DNA of 63,694 nt, the filler included, from Platydemus manokwari (lineage: Eukaryota), in assembly GCA_037951405.1 (NCBI GenBank). It is 6 parts of 6 records of this genome, joined end to end, with 100 filler letters (N's around TTAATTAATTAA, not from the genome) between each part and the next. Parts side by side here need not be neighbours in the genome. Positions count along the whole stretch, not along the records: positions 38,514 to 52,371 come from JBBMOY011592520.1; 5 more parts are not named here. One strand, written 5' to 3'. The notes under the pieces were generated by a model. That model saw nothing but the letters and a program-made list of their open reading frames with translations. It made no database searches and was not told where the DNA came from. Each line of letters opens with the position of its first letter. The first letter of the stretch is position 1. Below, piece after piece: positions 1,033-50,329 of the stretch. Position numbers and translations under genes: made by a program.

Positions 1033-2249
1033 TTGTTCATGATTGAATTCATCATGATTACCTCTAAGTTGTGAGTTAAAGAAACATTTTATCTTAAGTT
1101 TTTAATTTTCATTCATACCATTGAATTGATGAAGGTCGTTTATGAATCTTCATAGATGTGTCATAATACCTGCATGTGTACATGAATTATCTTTGTTGAT
1201 TATATTTTGTATTTATCTGTTTTCTCAAATATGCCTGGAATAATAAATCGATTTTTCTATTATATTTTCGTATTATTATTATGTTCTCTATAAATCATTG
1301 AAACAAATTGTGTCTGTCATAATCCTAACTTTACAAAAAATAGATAAAGATTTTTAAAAAAATGTCGGTTAATTTTTGTTAATAATTTATGAGGGCCTGT
1401 TATTTTGATAATTGTGGTCATTCTTTATAGTGCCTTCAAGTAAAGAAATAAAGTAAAACTAACAACAGCAATATTATTAACTATGAAGTCAGGGCTTCAT
1501 AATCATAATTTAAATACAACATTCCAGTATATCCATGGCTATATTAGAAAAATTATAAGCACAGGGATGTGTAACAAAGCATTGATGCGATATTCATCTC
1601 AAATTTCATCAATTATTCAAATTAAGACTGAAGTACTCTTTTGGTTGTTTTAATGTTTAAAATCTACATTAATTTGATAAACCTCGATTCATCGAATTCC
1701 TTTGGTTTGGATAATTCTTCTAAATGATTATTTAGAATTAATCTTATATGTAAAACACTGTTTGATAAATGCTAAATATTAGACCTAGATTAACTCAAAT
1801 ATGCTACTGTACTTCACAATACATAATTGAATACAAACAACGATGTATTACACATTGAATACACTAGACAAGCATTTCAACATATAAAGTATGTAAAGGT
1901 ACTAAAAGATAAATTAATTATTTGTTTAATGAATCCAAATAAAAAGTCATTCAAAAGAAAAGGTGTAGATTTAAATTGTTGAATTTCAAAATTCATTTGA
2001 AATTGTTATTATTATATTGTTAGATACATAAATAATATATACATTAAAATATAAAACATGGGTGTAAAAAAATGAAATACAAAATTATGATTAATTAAAA
2101 TTTCAAAAACCCGTTACCATGTAGAGATTTAATTTTAAATTCCATGGCAACGCAAAAAATCACCATAGAGAAACAGAAATATAGAAAAAATTAGTCTTAC
2201 GCCCAAAAATCAGAAACCTATAAAAGCAAACAGATCAAATAAGAAAATG

Positions 2250-5200
2250 CACAAAAATCCAGGCATCGACATTAGACGTACGAAACCAGGCACAAGTTTC
2301 TCCCACCGGATTTACTAATTTTAAATTATCATTTGGATTATATCAATATGCCATTGTACCTGAATCAGTTAAATGTACGCATTCGACAGCAGAATCAGTT
2401 CAAGATATACATTCATTATTAACTTGGATTTTTCATTATTCAAACTTTACAACAATGGTATTTACTATTATTATTAATCATATCATTGATTTTTTTCATC
2501 AGTTTCCGACAGGAGATTATTTGAGAACTATTAATTACGCCATTCACAAAGTCTGAATAAAATTTATTGGAGTTTAAAAGTCAAAATCTTCCTTATTTTT
2601 TCAACATTTGCAGTAAAGTGCCCCTGGTTCTTTCAAGTGATTTATCATCTTCGGGACATCACAGCTTTCCCGATTTGAAACTTATACATTGCATATTTGT
2701 TAATTTTTATTATAATATCTTATTGCTATCAAAATTTGGTTATTATTACTATAATATGTATATTACATAACACGCAACCTATTATTTTGTCAGGAGCCAG
2801 ATATTTGGTGGAATCATCAAATATCTCTTCGAACTTATCATACTAATTTGCTGAATAGTTCATTGATAAAATATGTTGAATTATTTCTCATAATCACCAA
2901 ATCCCAAATTGAACTAGTGAAATTTCATCAATATAGCCCTTCAACTTTGCAAAGTGTTTTAGTGAAATGCTGATCAAAAATCACTTATTTGTACTGGTTC
3001 AGAAAGAGAAACACAGATGTGACACTTGTTCTTGACTGTAGGCATGATCTTTTCGACAATTCTGTTCACGGTCTGACAAATATATGTCATTAAATTTTAT
3101 TGGGCTTCAGTCACTATCTAATAAAGAAATTAAAAAAAACAAAGTAATTAAGGGATCCAGAAAATGGGGTTGCTAAAATTGACAGAAGATTATACCAATC
3201 ATTGGCCTAATACTTATTTTGGTATTTTTGAAGTGATTGTTTAAATTTTAAGAAAGAATAAATAAAATATTTGCTATAAATGAGGTCTCATTGTATTCCA
3301 GTCTTAAATAGAATTCTTTTTGGAAAATATGATCAGGAGTTTATACTAATCACTTAAACAATAATACCAGTTCAAAATACAGCTGAATTGGTTAAAAATA
3401 AACTTCTACAAGTGTTAATCGAAAAACATTTGTTTTTTAATAATAAATTCAAATATTTTTTCTCATCAGAGTTTGAATGCCATCCTAATTTTTAAAAACT
3501 TAAGTGAAATCTCATCACATAATTCTAATAAAAGACGGCATATAATTAAACCTCGTAAAATACGGAATTTATCATTTTCGAATTATTTCAAATTACTAAA
3601 ATAACTTGGTAAATTTATAAAAATACCTAAGTTTAACTTTTCAACCAATAGCAACATTTTATAGAAGCCATTTATAATGATAATAAATAAAAGATTTTAT
3701 TTGGTGTTTTTAAGTTTCAATGATGATTTATTAAAAAGTTTAAAGATAAAAATTAATCACTTTAATTATTTAGATATTTTCTTTATTTAAAGAAATACCA
3801 TTAATTCATTGTAAACTTTTATCTAATTGAAATAAATTAAAAATGAACATACTTTTTAAAATTTTTAAATTTAAGTTATTCAAAAGCACGAATAACAATT
3901 TCTGAGTAATGAATTCCAACATTTCAGAAAATTAGATTAAAACCTTCAATTTACTAATTTTATAAATGAAATATTTAAACAATAGGATTTTCAGAAATTA
4001 TTATTTACAATTAAAAAATATAATTTTTTTAAATTATGTCTGGTTAAAAATGCGTTGCTTGGAAAAGTTTTACTAATTAAATGTACAATAAAATATTTTG
4101 AAATATTATTAGGGTTGATAAAATTATTTTCTTCTGGAGTCTAAGCAACATAGCTGGTTGATTTATTTTACTTTAATCTTGAATTTAACGAGAACTGAAT
4201 TTCTGGAAACTAATTTATTTGTGCTTGGTTTTGATATTTATTATTTGTTCTTTCCGAAACACAATAGCAAGAGTTCGTTGGAATAATATTTTTATTCCGA
4301 CTAAATACAAAATTTAGAATACTTTTATAAATCTCTATAATGAAATCAAAAGTCATTTTAGACACAGACAAACTTTATTCAATATTTACCGCAGTTAAAA
4401 AGAAGTTGTTATCACTACCTACCTTAATTTGAAGTCTATAAAACATAAGTCTCTTCACACACGAAAATGCTGATAAGGTACGTGAACAATCCCAGTATAC
4501 TTGCTCCTGATAATCAATTTAAATAATTAATATGGTAATCCATCAAATAATAAAATTTATAAAATAATAGCATTCAAACATAATGATGAATTTCAGTCAC
4601 TCTTCACATAATTAAGCTCATTTTGACTTTAATCCTACTACAAGGCTAATTCCGAATGGCAGTGAGTACTTCAGTTAAAAATAAAGTTTCCTATTTATTT
4701 TTCAAATAAATAAATACTATAAACTGGTTAAGTGCAAATAACCTTATATTAACTATCACAATATACCTTTTACTGGTTCAGAAATAGATTTTTTTCAATA
4801 TAATTAGTCGATGATAGTAATGTTAACGCTGCTTATTAAAATTTCGCTTTGTAATATCTTCGGCCCAATAAACTTGCAAATTATCCTGCACAAAAATCGT
4901 TGTTAGAAGTGCATTTGTTAATATGGTCTGAAAGTCTTTCAAATTTGCTATGAAATTGTTTTTCCCTCCTTGGGTTTATTTGTTAATGTCCCTATGATTT
5001 CGTCAGGGTCTTTATAGTCACCATTTACAAGTAATTCCCTTTCCATGTAAAAAATTTTATTTTTATCTCACCAATTATTAAATTATTTTATTTTATCATG
5101 AAGAATACATCTCAAGGTCATCGTAATGACCTAATCTATTTATCTCTAAACGATGTTAACCCACGTTTATTTTATTTAATTAAATATAATGCTCATTTTT

Positions 5201-5330
5201 CTTCAAAGTTGTTCTAAGGTCGTATAAATGACCATTATAATTTCTTATTTTTATTAAAAGTTTTTTCCAGCTTATTTATAACTTTCATAAATTTATAAAC
5301 ATTATTTTATCAAATTTATGTAATGGGGAT
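2250..5330. mobile_element. Highly decayed LTR-retrotransposon (gypsy-like) integrase fragments
   Basis: Scattered stop-riddled peptides resembling integrase core and GPY/F motifs (minus strand DDSTKYLAP near 2800, KFIGP near 4870). No intact ORF; boundaries approximate. Confidence 0.35.
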
Positions 5331-5409
5331 CCTTTGATCTACTTTCGTATTGATGATAATTTATAACTTAATTTTATATATAATTGCGATATTTGATTTA
5401 TTCATATAA

Positions 5410-5860
5410 TGTAATTAATATCTCACTTTTTAGGATGTCTAATAGTGACAAAACATAGTTTTTTAATTAAGTTCCTGTTTTAATTACAGGACTTATATAT
5501 GATTATTTGAGTTTTTAAATTTAAATTTTTAGTTAACAGGCATGTTTAATGATATCATTGCCTATTTTTATAAAATAATAAAAGAATTTCTCTTAATTTC
5601 CTTCTAATATTAAAAAGGGTCCCTCGCAAATTTTCAATAAATTGCAACCTACTTGCGACCTATTTTGACTGAATTTTCAAGTAATCAAATTTTAGGAGAT
5701 TTTGAACATTTGATTTCAAACAACTAAAATTCTTCTTAACTACTTAAATAAAAAATTCAAAATGTTTTTAAAGAATATAATTAAATAAACTATATGGATT
5801 TTTGCAATACATTCAACAAATTAAAAATTTTATTTTAGTTCCTCTTTTTCTTAACTTTAA
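5410..5860 (+). repeat. Dispersed AT-rich repeat family, copy 1 (other copies ~23940-24200 and ~29460-29830)
   Basis: Shared block aaaatgtttttaaagaatataattaaataaactatatggatttttgc (~5760) recurs nearly identically at ~24127 and more diverged at ~29740; tcactttttagga at ~5423 and ~29473. Confidence 0.7.
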
Positions 5861-7060
5861 GCAAAACTTCTTATCACGATGAATTTACTTTTACGTATAT
5901 TTGGTAACATTGCTAGAATTTTATTAAGGAAAAATATATAAAATTCATATAACTCACTTCTTCATTAAATAATTTTCATTATATTTATTAATTAAGGAAG
6001 TTTATGATTAGCTTGATAAGAAGAAACCAATTTATAATAAAAAATATTAAAGACAGAAGAATCCAGATATTTTTGCAATATTTTTTGAAATTCATCATTT
6101 ATACATTGATATATAAATGTTATACATTATAAATTTATATATAACTATATTACATTATACTTTTATATAACTATAGTACATGGAACACCAGAAATTGATT
6201 GCCAAATTATATATATATCATTTTAATTTTACTCATATTTGTCAGAACCCCAACAATTTTATGAAGGAACATCTAAGAATTAATAATTTTAATATAATTA
6301 ATTTAGGGAATTAATAAACCCAATAAAATAATAAACGAAATAAAAAATCAGTTAATGAAATTTCGAAATTAAGTTTTAGGATGAGGATTTGGATTTGTGT
6401 AAGTCATGAATTTAGATCTGAAAAATTCAGCTGTCAATTTAGATTTTTATCAAGCTTTATTTTATCGTCCTATTAAAATTTGTAGACTCATTTACACCTG
6501 CAGTCTCTAATAAGAAAAATAGAATAGTCGGCGAAACTCATTATAAAGATATTTCCCATAATGGAAACCCCATGAAATTAGAAACATAATATGAAAAAAT
6601 AGTAGCAGAACACGATCAATAATAGACCAAATATATTATTTTAATAATTAAAATATAAATTGATAATAAAATACCAGTAAATGTTAGCGAAAATAATCAA
6701 TAAATTCCATTAAAAAATGCGATATTTTATCGGGAGAAAATCAAAATGAAATATTTGTCCATCTATTTAGTAAAATTGGTTGTAATTGGATCACTACTGA
6801 CTTTAAAAAATAAAATGTTTGGTTTACTGCGCAGTTGTGCAAGCAAATCAATATTAATACCGAATATAATGTTGGGATCCAATTACGCCCACAGATTAAC
6901 TTAAATAACCTACACATCTACAAGAAATAATATAATCAAAAATAACCGAAAATTCTAAAAATAAACATGGCGTAATTCCTAAATTAGAAACACACTTTAA
7001 TATGAAATTTTAAAATCACATAACTAGAAATAAATATACAAGTAGCTAAAAATAGAATTA

Positions 7061-8550
7061 TGTCATAACAAAAATGGAAAATTCATGATTGACTGAGAGA
7101 ACGACAAAATACAGTATATAAAGCTAACAAATTTTAGAACAAATCGCCATAACAATACAAGGCAAGCTAGTTGCAATAGAGTGAAATAGGAACTAATTGT
7201 TAGAATAGCCATCCTTCAGCCAGAAGTTACAAACAAGAGTATCCTTAGTCAGCACGATAGAGTAACGACGCAACAGGAACCGACAGAAACTAACATATCA
7301 GTCGATTTATTGACAGTTTAGGTATAAATCGCATTGCTAACTGTTTCATATCGTGTCACAAGATTCTATGTTAAGTAATCAATCCTTCGTTTTTCTCCTA
7401 TCTTTTCAGAGTTTTTATCCGTTGAACCGTTCACCAGTATCGTGGATTAAGCGGGTCAACACTTCGCCAGCTCCATGTTCACGCAATTATATTAATCACC
7501 TCTGTTAATTACTGATTGTATTTGTTTTGATTATTAATTATACCTTTCAGTATATTCACGTTATTGTAATTTATTATATTATTACCTATAATTAAATCGC
7601 AACCTACATTACGTCACTCGAAACACAACAGATTTTTTGTAGTCCCATATGTAAAAACAACGAGCAACTCAACAACCAGACACAGCTCACTCAAATAAAA
7701 TCCAAAATCCAAGCCGAGGTGGTGAGTGAAGTAGAAAATCTATCAGATCACGGAGAAATTCAGAAGATTCGGGTACCACATCGAAGAGGATTGGGTACAA
7801 AAAACCTAAAAAGGTGGCAACAAGATAATTATTACGAGAGACAACCACCATACCACAAGGTGAATAACTTCGAAAAAGAATAGAGGGCATTAGGAGAAAC
7901 GAAAATCACAAAGATACCGATGACGTCATACAATGGAGACCACTCTTATTTGCACGAATTCATGGGGAACTATTACCAACTGTCAGAGGCTTACAAAGTC
8001 CATGAACTATGCATGATCAAGATATTGTCAATATATTTAACCGAAATGGCAAGAGAAAATTACCACACCGCTCTCATGACGATGCGTAACAATACTTGAC
8101 TATCATTCAGGACAGCCTTTGGAAAGGAAGTCTTACTCGCAGAAACCGGTTTATTATTCCGGAAAAAATATAGGGAAAGAAAGCAGTTGTCAGGCGAGCT
8201 TGCCGGCGAATTTACACACCACTTAGCTATCTTGACCGAGCGACCCTATGGACCCAGAGAGGAATGGCCTCCCAACACGGAAAATGATTTAAAGGACACA
8301 CTCTTTGAAGGATTCCTCCCACCGATCCGAGCAGCACTCAGCCTGCACATGGGAGATGATTTTGACGAGCTGGTACGAAAAGCTGGTCAACAAGGAATCA
8401 GTATATGTCGTAACTGAACAAAAAGAATCATACAGATCCCTGAATCAAGGACAGAGTTACTAAAGAAACAACCTAGGCAAACCAAACCTGAGTTGCTTCA
8501 AATGTGGATGGCAAGGTCGCGGATTGAAAAACTGCCCAGTACAAACTAAT
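7061..8550 (+). mobile_element. Ty3/gypsy LTR retrotransposon remnant: LTR-like segment plus disrupted gag
   Basis: ~7909-8417 reads KIPMTSYNGDHSYLHEF...YLTEMARENY...*LSFRTAF...RERKQLSGELAGEFTHHLAILTERPY...LFEGFLPPIR (Retrotrans_gag-like pattern). A degenerate zinc knuckle CFKCGWQGRGLKNCP follows at ~8495-8540. TG..CA-bounded segment at 7061-7360. Confidence 0.7.
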
Positions 8551-11041
8551 GAAATGCAAGATTTGGAAAGAAATAGTTATAAAAATTTATACAATGCTCT
8601 ACATAATTTCTCAGTGTGAATTAATTGTTGGACCGATATCCCAACCGGTCTAAAATTGTGAAAAAGGATTACTTAAATCAAACGTGATAAAGGTTATGAA
8701 GTCTATCTTATCATCTTTACAATTTTAAACTCATTATTTGTTTATATTTTCTTAGCAACTAATATTTACATCTTTCTAATTGAATTAAATCGCGATCTTT
8801 GAGCTTTGTAGGCTGTGAAGATACAATGCCACATAAAATTCATAATAAAATAATTGATAAAATATTAAATCATGAAAGAAATTTTTAAAAATAAATCAAG
8901 TTTCACTTAAATAAATCAAAATAATTTTTAAGCAATGAAAGAACCCTCAGACAATAAAATGTTCTAAATGAAAAACAAAGACCATTAAGAGGCATAACAA
9001 AGTTAAATGCAATTAAACAAATCATAAAGAACAAAGATATTTTGACCGCAATAGGAGAACAATTAACGTTGCCATAACCGGAAAAAGAATGGGCAATACT
9101 ATAAATATCGGCTTTAACAAATTTATTTTCACAAAATTATTACGGTATTAGCGAGAATTGATTGAAATTCTTTCTCTTGTTTGAACACAGATTTTTTTGT
9201 ATTCGTTCACTTATAGTGCCCCCTATTTACATTAATTGGAGATCAATAGTTTTAATAGATCATTTTGGGATTTATAAATAAAATTTCTGTTACTTCGGGA
9301 TTTGCATCTAATATACCAGTGAAAATCAACGCGGAGGAAGATTTTTCTTGAAATCCTATCAGAAATTTCATTTGTAATTTCTGAATCCAAGGTAGCGTAC
9401 ATGGTCTAATTAAAAAAATAAAACTATTGAAATCATCATCTTTCCTTGAATCAATTTATTGGCCCGACAACTTGGCCTTCCCACTTGAGATATAAGTTAG
9501 TGCACATTTGCATTTAAATTCATTTCCGATTTATTTATTACGTTATGGTCATCTACTACAATATAAATATCGCATTGTTTTATTATACTTATAATAAATA
9601 TTCTAGATTAATTCCGGTTGTAGCTGCGTTCTATTTGTGTGAAGGAAGACCAGTTAAAGAATACTTTTTATCGATATACACTTGTAACTTTTTGAGGTCA
9701 CTGCTTTTATTCTTTTTATAATTATTTCACTTGATCTATATTTACGTCTTTATAAGTACTCTGAGCCCGTTTCTCCCCTCAGGTAGTTATTTGACCTATA
9801 TTATTTGATTTTGTTTCGCCTCGACGTTCTCAACTTATATGAAGATAAGTGGAACGGCGTAGAATCGATTTGAGTTTAACTCTATTTTTACCTCTATTAT
9901 TGTCTTTTTACAATCCTCTTTATCAGTCCCGATTTTATCAGCAAAAGCTTTTTCCTAAAATTGGTGGTAAATGTCACTGAAATTTATGTATAATGAAATT
10001 GTGATATCTTGTGCCAACTCGATTTTATGCTACAATTATTTATTATGGGTAACAATATGCACCGAATTATACGTATATGATAATTATTATAAATTACCAC
10101 GTTATACAGCAAATTATATGTTCACAACAATTAAATAAAATAAATTATAAATTACTACTTTTATACGTTAATTTTAAACACTACTTTTACACAGTTAAAC
10201 GATGGGATAACTATTCAATGTGCAGTTTAGGGTAGAAGATCGTGGACCAACAAGACCCTTCGTAATATTAGGTAGGTGTCTGTTTACAAGAGTTTTTTCC
10301 GATCTCGGCTCTATAAATAGGGAGAATATGCGATTTATATAATTTAATATTGATTTTATACGAACGAAAATTAAATACTTTTATACACCAAGATCATGCA
10401 TGCAAAAAATTGTCATATTGAACGTTAATTTTCCCAGAACCCTAAGACACTTTTTATATAGATATGAATTGTAGTTAATGGAATATATTTGATGTTATCC
10501 CAAAGTAACACAGACTCTACTATTTGAAATAGATTTACTCTTTTTAGTACACATCATTTCATACGAGTTTCACTCAGTCCCCTCCATCCATCATACCTTA
10601 ACGAAATTCCAAAATTATTTAGTATATTAATTCACCCAGATTATTTTGGTCTTAGAATTCATTTTGAGGTACTCTACGAACTATAAGAGAAATTTGAAAT
10701 AGTTAATGTATGTAAACACAAATGTGAAAACAAAAATTCTTGAAAATCTTAAAAACATTTAAATATTTTTGAGTAAGTGACCAAATGAAAATAAGTAAGT
10801 ATTTTCAAATTATATGCATGAACTGTCTTAATATTTATGTAAAATTTAATGGAAAGAGACTATAACAAAGTAGACTCTAAAAATTTATATTCGCTGAAAT
10901 TAATGTAAATATAATTTAAATTACCTCATAAAAATTACCATAGAACTAATTTATTCTAAAGTTTCTCATTTACAATATATTTACCACACTAAATAATAGT
11001 GCAGTGAAATTTAACATAAATAAGTTTTATTATTAGCAATA

Positions 11042-41346: not shown

Positions 41347-41533
41347 ATTACACAAACAGGTTTATCGTTGTAATTAGGTTGGTAAATTACAGCCCAATTT
41401 ACAAAAACATTCTTTTACCAGTTATGAATATTTGTAAATTTATTAAAACGCCGGCTTTATTATACTTTGGGGGCACTTTCGCCTTGACCCAGATTATTGC
41501 TATGGTTACATAGCAACCTGTAATTTCTGTAAT
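41347..41533 (-). ncRNA. Candidate structured RNA element B downstream of the DDX5/17 coding region (family unknown)
   Basis: Nested helices: closing ACAGG(UU)/(AA)CCUGU (41515-41521 with 41356-41362), UUGCUAUG/CAUAGCAA, a GAAA-tetraloop hairpin, AAUUUACAAA/UUUGUAAAUU (41431-41440 with 41396-41405), UGUAAUU/AAUUACA. Confidence 0.5.
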
Positions 41534-41989
41534 TTCAATTTAATATTTTAAATTTGGATTTCTTATTTTGATTTAAGATTTATGAAATGATTTATGAAAA
41601 ATTATTTAAGTTAGTTGTTTTTATATGTGAATATTTTTTTTAAATAATAACGTGTTATTCTATATTTTTTTCAGCGTCAATCTTTAATTATACTATATAA
41701 ATTTTGCAATTCGCTTGGAATTCCTTTATTTACTGGTTACTAGTTTGTTGGTGTCCTCAGAGTATAACATAGCCAATTTTTTTAATTGATCTAATTAATT
41801 TTAAAATATTAAATTGTGAAATACAGGACTTGAAAGAATATGTTAACAAATTTGAGTAAAATTGAAATCTTTGATATACAAAAATGATATTTTAAGCTAT
41901 TTCCCTCATAATAAACATAACAAATTAGGTAATCGATAATTTCGCTATTATGTAATACCATAATATATTATCAAATATTATTTCATTTG

Positions 41990-42155
41990 TGCTAATTTAG
42001 AAGTGGCCAACCCTCCACATGAGCAAAGCGTAAATGGATGATAAAACTTAAATAACAAATTTAATTTACAATCAGTGTAAATTCACAAGCTTAACCTGTG
42101 TCGGCAAAGGTTTATCTTGAAGCTCACGCGAAGTGGGCTGGCCTCCTCAAAGCAA
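41990..42155 (-). ncRNA. Candidate structured RNA element A downstream of the DDX5/17 coding region (family unknown)
   Basis: Arms 42122-42148 and 42000-42024 form 19 Watson-Crick plus 5 G-U pairs on the minus strand and enclose two hairpins (42086-42119, 42063-42083). Confidence 0.6.
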
Positions 42156-42159
42156 TTTC

Positions 42160-43441
<1,282 letters not shown>

Positions 43442-45639: not shown

Positions 45640-46225
45640 TGGATTATGAATAATTATTTTTGTTTATTGTTTTCTTTTTTCTTATTGGATTTTAAATTTA
45701 ATTTTATAAATCCGCCTACATTAATAATTTCAATTCATTTTTCGTCCAAATTATTAATTTAAATATCCTTATTGCCCAAAGTAATTTGATTATGCCCACA
45801 TTTATTTTTCATAATTTATATCTTGCCCACATTTTTACATTTTATTATAAATTTATTCATTCTTATAATTATTAAAAATATAATTTTGCTATCATAGATT
45901 TTCATTATAGTTATTCAATAAATTTTATACATCAAATTTTTTTTACATATTCAACAATGTAATTATAAAAAAATATCGACATATTCAAAAATAAATTATA
46001 CAAATTTCATGAAAAATGGTCACAAAAATTACAAAGTCACATCATCAATTTCCACTTTCCACTCGGATTGGGGCTTTTGTAGACTTTGATTGGTGGATTT
46101 GGTTTGGGATTGGTAGATTGAAGACTGGAATTGAGAAGATTATCCAGCTCGTTGAGACATTTGAAAAACTGAAGACATGGAGAACTGTTGTGATTTAAAT
46201 TATATCATTGATCCAGCTGTGTAAC
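45640..46225 (+). repeat. Dispersed repeat, direct copy of ~49640-50090
   Basis: Collinear shared blocks ggattatgaataat, ataaatccg.c.aca..ttaataa, attgagaagatt, atcca.ctgt. Confidence 0.6.
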
Positions 46226-47296: not shown

Positions 47297-48127
47297 ATGA
47301 AAACTGAGATTTGTGCTCCAAACTATATCAACATAAAAAATGAACCATTGATCTGGAAGTATAGATTTCTTCATCATTTATAAAATAACCCTATTCCTTT
47401 AGAAATAACTTAGAGCAGTTCATAGAGAAGGCTGAACAGGATGAAGTGGAGTTACTAAATTATGGAAATAACACTTTCAGTCTTAGAACAGTCATTTACG
47501 AAGATCTTAGAAACAATGACATATATTCTCATCTATTTATGGATAATCCAAGAACCTACCCATCAGGAAATTTGAATTATGGAGTGAATAAAAATCTTTT
47601 GGGTTCTGAATTAAGAAATATAAAATTAAATGAAAGTGCTTTTAAAAAATATACGACAATGAATGGTGTAAGCTCTTCGAATAATGTATTTGAATACGCA
47701 ATCAATGATTCAAATGTTATGATTCAAACTTCTAGCAACAATAACAACAAATCGATTCATAAGAATAAACCATTGAATAAGAAAGCGGTAAGAATTATGG
47801 AAAAGTGGTATATTAACCACATAGATTATCCTTACCCGAAAGTTAAACAAAAGGAAAAACTTGCCATGAAAGGATCGATATCAATTGCCCAAGTGAAATA
47901 CTTGATACAAATAATATGTTAATGATAAATTTCAATTTTAGGTTAATTCATGGTTTGCTAATCGGCGTAATAGAAGTGATAACACCAAACCAAAAAAGAA
48001 TCGAAAATGCTTAGAGACCCAACTGATGCTTTATGCTAAAGAACTGGAATCACAAAGTTACGGAAGCTTAAAAGGGTCTTCGATTTCAAATAAATTATCA
48101 AAAATTCTAAATCAATATCAAAATTAA
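47297..48127 (+). CDS. TALE-class homeobox protein, spiralian-specific (SPILE-like) type; exons 47297-47358, 47403-47892, 47942-48127
   Basis: GT-AG introns of 44 and 49 nt give homeodomain KPLNKKAVRIMEKWYINHIDYPYPKVKQKEKLAMKGSISIAQVNSWFANRRNRSDNTKPK (PYP loop, Ala50). Confidence 0.9.
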
Positions 48128-50329
48128 ATCTGGCCAGTAACAACTACTAAATTTTGATCAATTTTCGATTTGTATTTCAACTCTTTCACCTTTGCTCGTG
48201 ATAATTATGATTTAACTTAAAACGAAAATAATGTTTAATAAATTGTCAAATTTCTTTTGCTATTAAATTATTAGTGATTCTAATTTATATTTATAATTGA
48301 AATTATATATTTTCTAATTATTTTCATATTCAAATTATTCAACAGGTACATGAGGTTCTTTAGAATTCTATGCCCAATATACCAATGCAATATCAAAACA
48401 TCGAAATCGTAAAAATTAATGATATTAGAAATAACCATTATAGATATATTAAAGAACAAAACAGTAACAATTCATAAAATTATGAATAGTATTTGTAAAC
48501 ACTAAAATAACATCTCAAGTTTTTCTAAAACACTAATATTCAAATACGAATAATAAACATTGATCAACTAACAATATTTTTTAGTAACCAATGCTGGATT
48601 ATTTCAAAAGTAATAACACACAATACAATTTAAATAATGATATACTGTTTCTTTTAGCTAAAAACTATGCAAAACAAAATGAGATAAAATGATTTAAAAA
48701 TATTTCTTCATCTAGTAAAACAAAATTTATATAGCCATTAAATTTGTTTGCTTGTATATATAAATACTTATATGATGGCGCTTTATAATAATAAATTGTA
48801 TTTGAAATTATTTATTTTCGATAAGTGGATGAAAGAAATTTTATACTTTTCAAATATTAAAATTCTTGTTTTATCAATTAGTTAAACTGGACATATATGT
48901 TATTATGAAAAGATATTTTTAATTAAAAACAATTCAAATTGTTTAATTTATAAGAAAACTGAAAAGAAGAAAATATTATAATGAATTCTATAAATAATAT
49001 CAAAATTCTCTTTACATAAGTTATAAAAAATATTTTAGGAGATTAGCACTTTCAAGCATTTAACAAACTGATTGTTTCACAGTGTTAAAAAAGGTCCGTA
49101 AAAATCTTTCAAGTTTGTCTTGATGGTTCTATTTGTTACTGTCATACCTAATGTGAGTTATATGCTGTCATTTGAAACGCAATGTGAATTATAAATAATA
49201 AATGACAAATACTTAATCAATACTTGTTACTTTCAGGTTTATAACAATGTAGACATTAATTGAATATAAATCACTTTATAAATTATATTTAAAATATCCC
49301 AACCAAGCAAACTTAATTTAATAATCAAATAAAGTCAATGTATATCAAACACCAACACCAAGGAAAGATAGTTCGAAGAGGAAAAGTTCAATTATCGAAC
49401 CTCAGTATTTTTGATATAATAAATGTTAAAATATAATGGATTTTAATATATTTATTCAGCAAAGCTTAAATGTAATTTTTTTCTTATCTTTTTTGATAAT
49501 AAATTTCAATAAAGAGCAAAAATGAACTACAAGCTTTTTGAATAATAAGTCTTTAAGTCTTCTAAAATTACTCATTCAAAATAATTTCTGAAGTATTTTT
49601 ATAATTTACTAAATGCTTTCATATTATTTTTCCCAATGAGGATTATGAATAATCAATTTTATTATTATATTTTCGCCCATTAGATTACAAAAATTTTAAT
49701 TTTATTATTCATCATAAATCCGTCCACAGTATTAATAAAATTAATTTTCCTCTTACATAGATTTTATAAAATTTATAATATTAATGATATTTTTCAATAA
49801 AACTGTCCCAAATAATAATTTTTTTTACATTTATATTTTACAATGATGTTTTCGATAAAATTTTTCACAAATAATAAAATTTACATTATTATTTCTTATC
49901 AATAACAAGTAATAAAAATTTTTCAGTTTATAAAAATCAATTTCAATAAAAGATGGAATTCGAGAGCAACTGCTGATAACCTGAACATTGAGAAGATTGA
50001 CCTTTGTTGTCTATCAATTGCTGATAATTTGAAGATCAGGAAGAAAATAGAGAAAATTGATGTTGAGATTTTTTATGCATCCACCTGTAAAAGGTTGGCC
50101 TAAGAATAAACATTTTTAAAAAGTTTAAACATGAAGGTAATTTAATTTGGAGGATTCAAAATCCATTTGAAACTATTTTGAACTATATTAGTGTGTTTTA
50201 AACGAAGACCATTGGAAAACTTATATAGACTATTGAATCAACAGAAATGAACGGCCATATGTTGGGATTATTATAATTCACGATAATTGTCAAAACGTTA
50301 TTGTAAGTCTACGAGACATACTTTTGGGC

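What the first reader, a model, noticed from the sequence alone, without database searches (positions are those of the whole stretch)
41990..42155. Structured RNA element A right after the last recognisable DDX5/17 exon
Seen: a GC-rich island in otherwise very AT-rich DNA. On the DDX5 sense (minus) strand, GAGGAGGCCAGCCCACUUCGCGUGAGC (42148-42122) pairs with GCUCAUGUGGAGGGUUGGCCACUUC (42024-42000): 19 WC pairs, 5 G-U, one A-A and a 2-nt bulge. Five of the six substitutions between the arms are wobble-compatible only on this strand, which fits an RNA helix better than a DNA inverted repeat. It encloses two hairpins (CAAG..AACCU-loop-AGGUU..CUUG and AAUUUACA-CUGAU-UGUAAAUU), making a multiway junction, and an ACA triplet follows the stem. 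Established: yeast DBP2 autoregulates through its intron and vertebrate DDX5 has a conserved retained intron in this part of the gene. Inference: an undescribed cis-regulatory structure or intronic ncRNA.
Basis: partly seen in the sequence, partly recalled or inferred. Interest (0 to 1): 0.8.

Follow-up and report, generated by a model that had tools for sequence, protein, structure and literature searches.

The report
Strong RNA fold in helicase intron
A single-copy, 149-base GC-rich stretch just inside an intron of a DDX5-type RNA-helicase gene folds into an unusually stable RNA structure on the gene's own strand; it may let the helicase sense and limit its own production, but this rests on one sequence and is not proven.

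Summary
On the minus strand, which is the helicase sense strand, 42148-42122 pairs with 42024-42000. That gives 19 Watson-Crick pairs, 5 G·U pairs, one A·A mismatch and a 2-nt bulge, enclosing three small hairpins.

- **Stability:** the 149-nt element folds at -51.3 kcal/mol, z -5.5 on the minus strand against z -2.0 on the plus strand.
- **Rank in the piece:** it is the most stable of 1370 windows scanned. Its closing duplex (-36.9 kcal/mol) is far beyond every other long-range duplex (next best -23.7).
- **What it is not:** it matches no Rfam family and no tRNA. It is not repeated: contigs of the one public run that holds it lie at single-copy depth over it, while a high-copy repeat 214 nt downstream is obvious.
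- **Position:** it starts 82 nt inside an intron whose position and phase are shared with flatworm DDX5 genes.

The weak points are these. In those relatives (55-59% protein identity) the same intron is only 36-238 nt, is not structured and has no homologue of the element. The helicase's downstream exons are absent from the remaining 3.7 kb. No RNA data exist.

Most likely (about 0.4) it is a lineage-specific cis-acting pre-mRNA structure, possibly a helicase-sensing autoregulatory element like the plant DEAD motif. The main rival (about 0.35) is a functionless inverted-repeat relic.

The parts
42122..42148 (-). 5' arm of the closing helix (27 nt, 70% GC). It can also form a local alternative hairpin.
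42000..42024 (-). 3' arm of the closing helix (25 nt, 60% GC). It carries four of the five U residues of the G·U pairs.
42086..42119 (-). Inner hairpin 1 (CAAG/CUUG, AACCU/AGGUU, UG/CA). Its 3' side holds a 5'-splice-site-like CAG|GUUAAG.
   Evidence: sequence read
42063..42083 (-). Inner hairpin 2: a perfect 8-bp AU-rich stem with loop CUGAU. On its own it is at chance level in this AT-rich DNA.
   Evidence: my estimate of chance frequency
42044..42062 (-). Inner hairpin 3: a weak 7-bp AU/GU stem that forms only on the minus strand.
42025..42043 (-). 19-nt single-stranded segment of the multiloop.
42149..42230 (-). First 82 nt of the intron. The 5' splice site is GAAA|GUAUGA at 42231|42230. 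Read-through adds 22 full codons after the junction-spanning AGT (Ser) codon, 23 residues in all, and stops at TAA 42162-42160, 11 nt before the helix.
42231..42670 (-). Helicase exon (motifs II and III, start of Helicase_C, ending ...[14 protein letters not shown]).
42671..42718 (-). 48-nt intron (GUAUGU...UUUUAG). It shows this genome's GUAUG-type 5' splice site.
42719..43275 (-). Helicase exon (Q motif, motifs I, Ia and Ib; Pfam DEAD E 3.5e-31).
41828..41839 (-). 12-nt complement (11 of 12) of the 5' splice-site region 42238-42227. In the 531-nt fold it closes a domain that contains the element. Near chance level.

Best explanation
The element is most likely a lineage-specific cis-acting RNA structure in the pre-mRNA of a DDX5/DBP2-type DEAD-box helicase gene.

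Shown:
- Starting 82 nt after the 5' splice site, a long intron carries a 24-pair GC-rich helix. The helix is interrupted by one mismatch and one bulge and closes a 97-nt multiloop with three small hairpins.
- The helix is 14 kcal/mol stronger on the sense strand, because all five non-Watson-Crick transitions are G·U there.
- The element is single-copy and matches no known RNA family.

Inferred mechanism: the helix acts on the splicing or retention of this intron. The stable fold may mask or present nearby signals. Candidates are the 5'-splice-site-like CAG|GUUAAG in hairpin 1, the AG 8 nt after the 3' arm, and the authentic 5' splice site, which can pair with 41839-41828. The helicase encoded by the gene prefers GC-rich junctions between single and double strands. 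It would loosen the helix when abundant, shifting output to non-productive transcripts; intron read-through stops 23 codons past the junction (counting the Ser codon that spans it). This would be negative feedback of the kind shown for the plant DEAD motif and proposed for the yeast DBP2 intron. Transcription, splicing outcome and helicase dependence were not tested.
For: Thermodynamics and uniqueness. Strand asymmetry: 5 G·U against 0 A·C in the closing helix (read), and the favoured strand is the gene's sense strand, about 1 in 32 under symmetric neutral decay. The intron's sense-strand composition is nearly symmetric (GC skew 0.02, TA skew 0.07), so no obvious mutational skew explains it. 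GC-rich arms persist in intron DNA of 20-30% GC. Single copy at 80% likeness or more in 543 Mb of contigs, while a neighbouring repeat reaches depth 1,800-10,000. No Rfam or tRNA match. No coding frame. The host is a DDX5-type helicase with intact motifs, and the intron position is shared with flatworm relatives. Precedents: plant DEAD hairpin as helicase sensor; yeast and human intron-mediated autoregulation; DDX5 preference for GC-rich ss/ds junctions.
Against: There is only one sequence, so no covariation or conservation. The orthologous intron in six relatives is short, unstructured and lacks any homologue. No RNA evidence exists. The next helicase exons (motifs V and VI) are absent from the 3.7 kb that follow, so the gene could be a truncated copy and the 'intron' untranscribed. 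GC-rich arms around an AT-rich core are also the anatomy of a MITE. The strand-asymmetry statistic is modest (p about 0.03). The splice-like signals inside the element are weak matches in AT-rich DNA.
Confidence: 0.4

Rival explanations
1. It is a functionless DNA-level inverted repeat. It could be the relic of an old or low-copy MITE-like transposon (GC-rich terminal inverted repeats around an AT-rich core), or of a local inverted duplication or template-switch event. It now decays neutrally inside a long, repeat-invaded intron. The good RNA fold is then a by-product of the inverted repeat.
For: The anatomy fits: 149 bp, arms of 25-27 nt that are 19 of 24 complementary as DNA, and a 29% GC core. 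The plus strand still folds somewhat better than shuffles (z -2.05). The intron has been invaded by a very high-copy repeat 214 nt away. Relatives lack the element. A near-duplicate AAATTGC / AAATTAGC lies close to both ends (read), though it is offset and AT-rich.
Against: No other copy at 80% likeness or more in 543 Mb of contigs of the same organism, none in the piece, and none in JGI metagenomes for the 5' arm. There is no clean target-site duplication directly at the ends. All five transition mismatches are G·U on the sense strand and none A·C (about 1 in 32) without matching compositional skew. The arms keep 60-70% GC although the arms differ at about 24% of positions.
Confidence: 0.35
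2. The helicase copy is 3'-truncated by a rearrangement or insertion near 42160-42230. The element belongs to unrelated DNA joined there and is not part of a spliced intron.
For: Motif V and VI exons are missing from the whole piece. The open frame simply runs 23 codons past the junction (counting the Ser codon that spans it) to a stop 11 nt before the element. The Pfam Helicase_C match runs a few residues past the presumed splice site. A paralogue with about 84% identity over the DEAD region exists in the same run (records 7 and 8).
Against: The break would coincide exactly with a conserved intron position and phase and with a GUAUG-type 5' splice site like the one in the neighbouring 48-nt intron. 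All upstream helicase motifs are intact. Long repeat-filled introns are plausible in a genome whose contigs total 543 Mb.
Confidence: 0.12
3. It is an independent small non-coding RNA gene hosted in the intron, such as a novel snoRNA-like, Y-RNA-like or other stem-closed RNA released by processing.
For: It has a stable terminal helix joining the 5' and 3' ends, a sense orientation in an intron, and no protein-coding frame.
Against: No Rfam match even in a 301-nt search (best E 6.6). There are no C/D or H/ACA boxes in the required places, and the ACA is 12 nt from the stem. There is no T-run terminator. It is single-copy and absent from relatives.
Confidence: 0.08

Closest known systems
Plant DEAD motif in DRH1/RH46 introns (Burgardt et al., bioRxiv 10.64898/2026.01.23.701338)
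   Same: It is a long GC-containing RNA helix inside a long intron of a DDX5-orthologous DEAD-box helicase gene, in sense orientation. Helix length is of the same order: about 20 bp there and 24 pairs here, beyond what a DEAD-box protein unwinds in one step. The proposed logic, a helicase-activity sensor giving negative feedback through non-productive splicing, would fit.
   Different: The plant motif is a simple hairpin with a 3-5 nt loop. It overlaps a proven alternative 3' splice site, is conserved with covariation in 123 land-plant species, and is absent outside land plants. Here the helix closes a 97-nt multiloop, no alternative splice site is proven, there is no sequence similarity, and there is only one instance, in an animal.
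Conserved autoregulatory intron of yeast DBP2 / S. pombe dbp2 intron 2 / human DDX5 (Barta & Iggo 1995 and Moore et al. 2011, as cited in PMC4695336; PMC1920232)
   Same: The gene family is the same and so is the region (RecA2 domain). The intron is unusually long for the species and lies late in the gene. Retention yields a non-productive transcript.
   Different: By my inference the conserved intron sits after ...ARG(I/L) of motif V, about 20 codons downstream of this one. Flatworm and fungal relatives have an intron there. The S. pombe mechanism uses Mmi1-binding motifs, not a helix. No structure like this one is described for those introns in the papers I could read.
MITEs (miniature inverted-repeat transposable elements)
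   Same: Size is about 150 bp, with terminal inverted repeats of about 25 nt, an AT-rich core, an intronic location and a strongly negative folding z-score.
   Different: It is single-copy at 80% likeness or more in the organism's contigs. There is no clear target-site duplication. The mismatch pattern is strand-asymmetric (G·U only).

Membership tests
Plant DEAD motif | Lies in an intron of a DDX5/DRH1-type DEAD-box helicase gene | tested here: met
   Pfam DEAD and Helicase_C. Best hits are DDX5/DBP2 proteins. The intron position is shared with relatives.
Plant DEAD motif | Single hairpin with a 19-20 bp stem and a 3-5 nt loop | tested here: not met
   The 24-pair helix closes a 97-nt multiloop with three hairpins.
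Plant DEAD motif | [quoted passage not shown] | not testable with these tools
   An AG lies 8 nt after the 3' arm and a CAG lies in the 5' arm, but no RNA run is available.
Plant DEAD motif | Conserved across species with covariation | tested here: not met
   There is no homologue in six relatives' loci and no closer relatives are available.
MITE | Terminal inverted repeats around a short non-coding core | tested here: met
   The arms are 19 of 24 complementary as DNA and the core is 97 nt at 29% GC.
MITE | Many dispersed copies in the genome | tested here: not met
   Depth is 11.3, equal to the single-copy flanks, over both arms at 80% likeness, against 1,800-10,000 for the repeat at 41500-41786. 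Copies below 80% identity would be missed.
MITE | Target-site duplication directly flanking the repeats | tested here: inconclusive
   Only an offset, imperfect AAATTGC / AAATTAGC lies near the ends.
Any Rfam 15 family (snoRNA, snRNA, Y RNA, ribozymes, miRNA and others) | Covariance-model score at or near the gathering threshold | tested here: not met
   There are no hits on the element among 13.8 kb at E up to 10. In a 301-nt search the best hits are 13 and 11.5 bits against thresholds of 60.
H/ACA snoRNA | Two hairpins with pockets, an H box hinge, and ACA 3 nt from the 3' end directly after the stem | tested here: not met
   There is one closing helix with a multiloop, and the ACA lies 12 nt beyond the stem.
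Yeast/human conserved DBP2/DDX5 intron | Same intron position in the protein | tested here: inconclusive
   This intron lies after ...RERERALE. Relatives and fungi have a second intron after ...ASRG(L/I). Dbp2 numbering (G392/D393) together with my recollection of a 424-codon first exon places the yeast intron at that second site. The original papers are not held.

The most novel reading that the evidence does not exclude
An animal (flatworm-like) DDX5 orthologue has independently evolved a helicase-sensing RNA helix in an intron of its own gene. This would be a convergent counterpart of the land-plant DEAD motif. It would suggest that 'a duplex in my own pre-mRNA as a gauge of my unwinding activity' is a recurrent solution for DDX5-type helicases.
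Probability: 0.2. Interest if true: 0.75.

Novelty: new variant of a known kind. Interest (0 to 1): 0.45.

Why it matters
DDX5/DBP2-type helicases remodel RNA structure across the transcriptome, and their dosage is tightly controlled. Yeasts and human use an intron of the gene for feedback. Land plants use a conserved hairpin as a direct sensor of helicase activity. No structured sensor has been described in animals in the papers I could search. If this helix is functional, it would be a second, independently evolved example. It would also be a compact test object: 24 pairs whose arms can be mutated and restored. If it is only a decaying inverted repeat, it is an ordinary by-product of a repeat-invaded intron.

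Tried and rejected
- **Known RNA families:** an Rfam scan of the piece and of the element alone and a tRNA scan found nothing.
- **Second copy nearby:** pattern search with 3 mismatches, blastn-short and a covariance model built from the element found only the element itself.
- **Copies in the genome:** contigs of the one public run that holds the locus show single-copy depth over the element. That run's contig is identical to the window and may be its source, so it gives no polymorphism data.
- **Exact 5' arm in JGI metagenome contigs:** 0 hits.
- **Orthologous introns:** six relatives were fetched. All share the intron position, but the introns are 36-238 nt, not structured and unalignable to the element.
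- **Covariance model on relatives:** the best hit (15 bits, E about 0.015) is a GC-rich hairpin far downstream in L001 and L002, not in the orthologous intron, and I treat it as chance.
- **The window's own ORF:** it is not in the gene-position index.
- **Search for the missing exons:** regex and tblastn with relatives' exons found no motif V or VI exon in the piece.
- **Coding reading of the element:** rejected, with stops in five of six frames and no similarity.
- **Bacterial-type promoter and terminator scan:** uninformative, and no T-run terminator was found.
- **Failed or unavailable steps:** One z-score scan timed out and was redone another way. The original papers by Iggo 1991, Barta & Iggo 1995, Moore 2011 and Rössler 2000 are not held.

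Full report
**What is there**

Read on the minus strand, the piece carries a DDX5/DBP2-type DEAD-box helicase gene.
- One exon runs to 42719. It holds the Q motif and motifs I, Ia and Ib (Pfam DEAD, E 3.5e-31).
- A 48-nt intron follows at 42718-42671 (GUAUGU...UUUUAG).
- A second exon runs 42670-42231. It holds DEAD, SAT and the start of Helicase_C, and ends ...[14 protein letters not shown].
- The 5' splice site is GAAA|GUAUGA at 42231|42230.
- Reading through that site adds 22 full codons after the junction-spanning Ser codon (23 residues) and stops at TAA 42162-42160.
- Eleven nucleotides later the element begins (42148-42000).

**The observation**

Both arms are at the stated coordinates and occur once each.
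- The closing helix has 4+9+11 pairs: 19 Watson-Crick, 5 G·U, one A·A mismatch and a 2-nt bulge.
- It encloses hairpin 1 (42119-42086), hairpin 2 (42083-42063), a weak hairpin 3 (42062-42044) and a 19-nt single strand.
- For the exact 149 nt the minus strand gives -51.3 kcal/mol, z -5.53, with 0 of 200 shuffles as good. The plus strand gives -35.7 kcal/mol, z -2.05.

- Among 1370 windows of 160 nt on both strands, the element on the minus strand has the lowest energy. It is also the largest composition-corrected outlier at -5.4 sd, with the next at -3.6.
- Among 6802 tests for a long-range duplex (a 27-mer against the 160 nt lying 40-200 nt downstream), the closing helix scores -36.9 kcal/mol. 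The background mean is -9.8 with sd 3.1, and the best unrelated site is -23.7.
- The same helix on the plus strand reaches only -23.0.
- The fold survives in a 531-nt context, in both MFE and centroid.
- The arms are 70% and 60% GC. They are two of only six stretches in the piece where 25-nt windows reach 60% GC, and even the helicase exons have none.

Most of the signal is the closing helix; hairpin 2 alone is at chance level for AT-rich DNA.

**What it is not**
- *Known RNA family:* no Rfam family matches, either in the piece at E up to 10 or in a 301-nt search. The best scores there are 13 and 11.5 bits against thresholds of 60. There is no tRNA.
- *Coding sequence:* five of the six frames are closed and nothing resembles the missing helicase motif V.
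- *Small RNA gene:* no run of T follows the stem. C/D or H/ACA boxes are not in the required places, and the ACA lies 12 nt beyond the stem.
- *Dispersed repeat:* I laid the contigs of the one public run that holds the locus on 41500-42700 at 80% likeness. Every bin over the element has depth 11.3, the same as the flanking exon, from a single 2026-nt contig. The stretch 41500-41786 reaches 1,800-10,000 and ends sharply at 41786. The method therefore sees repeats, and the element is not one at that stringency. Copies below 80% identity would be missed.
- *Other copies elsewhere:* none in the piece, and no hit to the 5' arm in JGI metagenome contigs.

**Strand**

All five non-Watson-Crick transitions in the helix are G·U on the minus strand, so they are A·C on the plus strand. 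A DNA inverted repeat decaying symmetrically would give either kind with equal chance. Five of five on one strand, with that strand being the host gene's sense strand, has a probability of about 1 in 32. The sense-strand composition of the surrounding intron is almost symmetric (GC skew 0.02, TA skew 0.07). No strong transcription-linked mutational skew is therefore visible to explain it. This is suggestive evidence for constraint at the RNA level, not proof.

**Relatives**

The closest proteins in the large collection are only 55-59% identical. The best named one is from the monogenean flatworm Protopolystoma xenopodis. The window's own ORF is not on record.

Six loci could be read past the exon end (L001, L002, L004-L007).
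- All have an intron at the same codon position and phase. It lies after ...RERExxL(N/S/R/D) and before a micro-exon of about 61 nt encoding (E/D)FRxGRxxxLVATD(V/I)A(S/A)RGLG.
- A second intron follows directly after ...RGL.
- The first intron is short in every case: about 36-50 nt in three loci, about 90-130 nt in one, and 226-238 nt in two.
- The longer ones do not fold better than shuffles (z -0.45, +0.66; sub-windows -0.7, -1.2, +2.4).
- They do not align with the element.
- A covariance model of the element finds nothing in them. Its best hit is a 15-bit GC-rich hairpin far downstream in L001 and L002.

So the intron position is old, but the element is at most lineage-specific, and covariation cannot be tested with what is available.

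**Which intron this is**

Fungal partial proteins in the hit list also stop right after ...ASRG(L/I). The Dbp2 structure paper numbers the HGD glycine and aspartate as 392 and 393. Counting from there puts the I of ARGI at residue 424. My recollection, not checked here, is that the first DBP2 exon has 424 codons. The famous yeast/human 'conserved intron' is therefore probably the second intron, about 20 codons downstream of the one holding the element.

**A caveat on the gene**

The micro-exon and the HRIGR exon are nowhere in the piece, by regex or by tblastn with the relatives' exons. Either the intron is at least 3.7 kb and invaded by repeats, or this copy is truncated. In favour of a real intron:
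- all upstream motifs are intact;
- the break coincides with a conserved intron position;
- the 5' splice site is of the same GUAUG type as the neighbouring 48-nt intron.

A paralogue with about 84% identity over the DEAD region exists in the same run, so a truncated duplicate cannot be excluded. No RNA run is on record.

**How it most likely works**

The host gene family is known for intron-based feedback.
- In S. cerevisiae the DBP2 intron mediates autoregulation, and retention is relieved in a helicase-dead mutant.
- In S. pombe, dbp2 intron 2 promotes decay.
- Human p68 controls partially spliced p68/p72 pre-mRNA.
- In land plants, a conserved 19-20-bp hairpin in a long intron of the DDX5 orthologues DRH1 and RH46 masks an alternative 3' splice site. 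The helicase opens it, shifting splicing to non-coding isoforms.
- That paper also cites DDX5's preference for GC-rich junctions between single and double strands.

The element here is a GC-rich helix of similar length, in sense, close to a 5' splice site of the orthologous gene. My best reading (0.4) is a cis-acting pre-mRNA structure that tunes splicing or retention of this intron, with helicase-dependent opening as the attractive version. Candidate signals it could hide or present:
- a CAG|GUUAAG sequestered in hairpin 1;
- an AG 8 nt after the 3' arm, which pairs in an outer 4-bp helix;
- the authentic 5' splice site, which has an 11-of-12 complement at 41839-41828 that closes a larger domain in the 531-nt fold.

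All of this is inference from one sequence.

**Rivals**
- A functionless inverted repeat, either an old MITE-like relic or a template-switch or inverted duplication (0.35). It explains the anatomy and the absence from relatives. It does not explain the single-copy status, the G·U-only pattern or the retained GC.
- A rearrangement junction in a truncated gene copy (0.12).
- An intron-hosted small RNA gene of an unknown kind (0.08).

**Verdict**

If functional, the element would be a new variant of a known kind: an intron-borne autoregulatory element of DDX5-type helicases. Interest is moderate, because the structural signal is strong and the host gene makes it meaningful, but there is neither conservation nor expression evidence.

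Noticed in passing
window 41500-41786: A very high-copy repeat. Summed contig depth is 1,800-10,000 against 11 for the single-copy flanks, rising towards a sharp boundary at 41786/41787, where several contigs diverge. It lies 214 nt downstream of the element, on the intron side. The profile would fit the abundant end of a 5'-truncated retroelement on the plus strand. The family was not identified.
   Followed up: partly
window 47446-47919 (+): An ORF with a TALE-class homeobox (Pfam Homeobox_KN, E 4.4e-06; motif WYINH...PYP). It shows the piece is from an animal and that a second gene lies about 4 kb upstream of the helicase on the other strand.
   Followed up: partly
window 41828-41839 and 42227-42238: A 12-nt inverted repeat (11 of 12) in which the downstream arm is complementary to the helicase 5' splice-site region (ACUUGAAA|GUAU). 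In a 531-nt fold it closes a domain that contains the element. My rough estimate puts it near chance level.
   Followed up: partly
L001 1510-1747 and 1809-1988; the same in L002, L004-L007: In flatworm-like relatives a micro-exon of about 61 nt encoding motif V (FRxGRxxxLVATDVASRGL) is flanked by two introns. The second, after ...RGL, is also present in fungal partial proteins and is probably the classic conserved DBP2/p68 intron.
   Followed up: partly
window 42593-42656: Two further contigs of the same run (406 and 2890 nt) match the DEAD-motif region with 10 differences in 64 nt. The genome therefore holds at least one close DEAD-box paralogue.
   Followed up: no
L001 3023-3088 and L002 2766-2831 (+): An identical GC-rich hairpin (-31 kcal/mol, z -2.1) in the GC-rich downstream part of the relatives' helicase locus. 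It is the best, weak hit of the element's covariance model (15 bits) and shares GGAGGCC.GC with the 5' arm. I took it for chance.
   Followed up: partly
window 50009-50117 (+) and 46132-46218 (+): Sub-threshold Rfam hits to C/D-box snoRNA models and U6 (16-24 bits, E 3-8), far below the gathering scores. They are probably noise.
   Followed up: no
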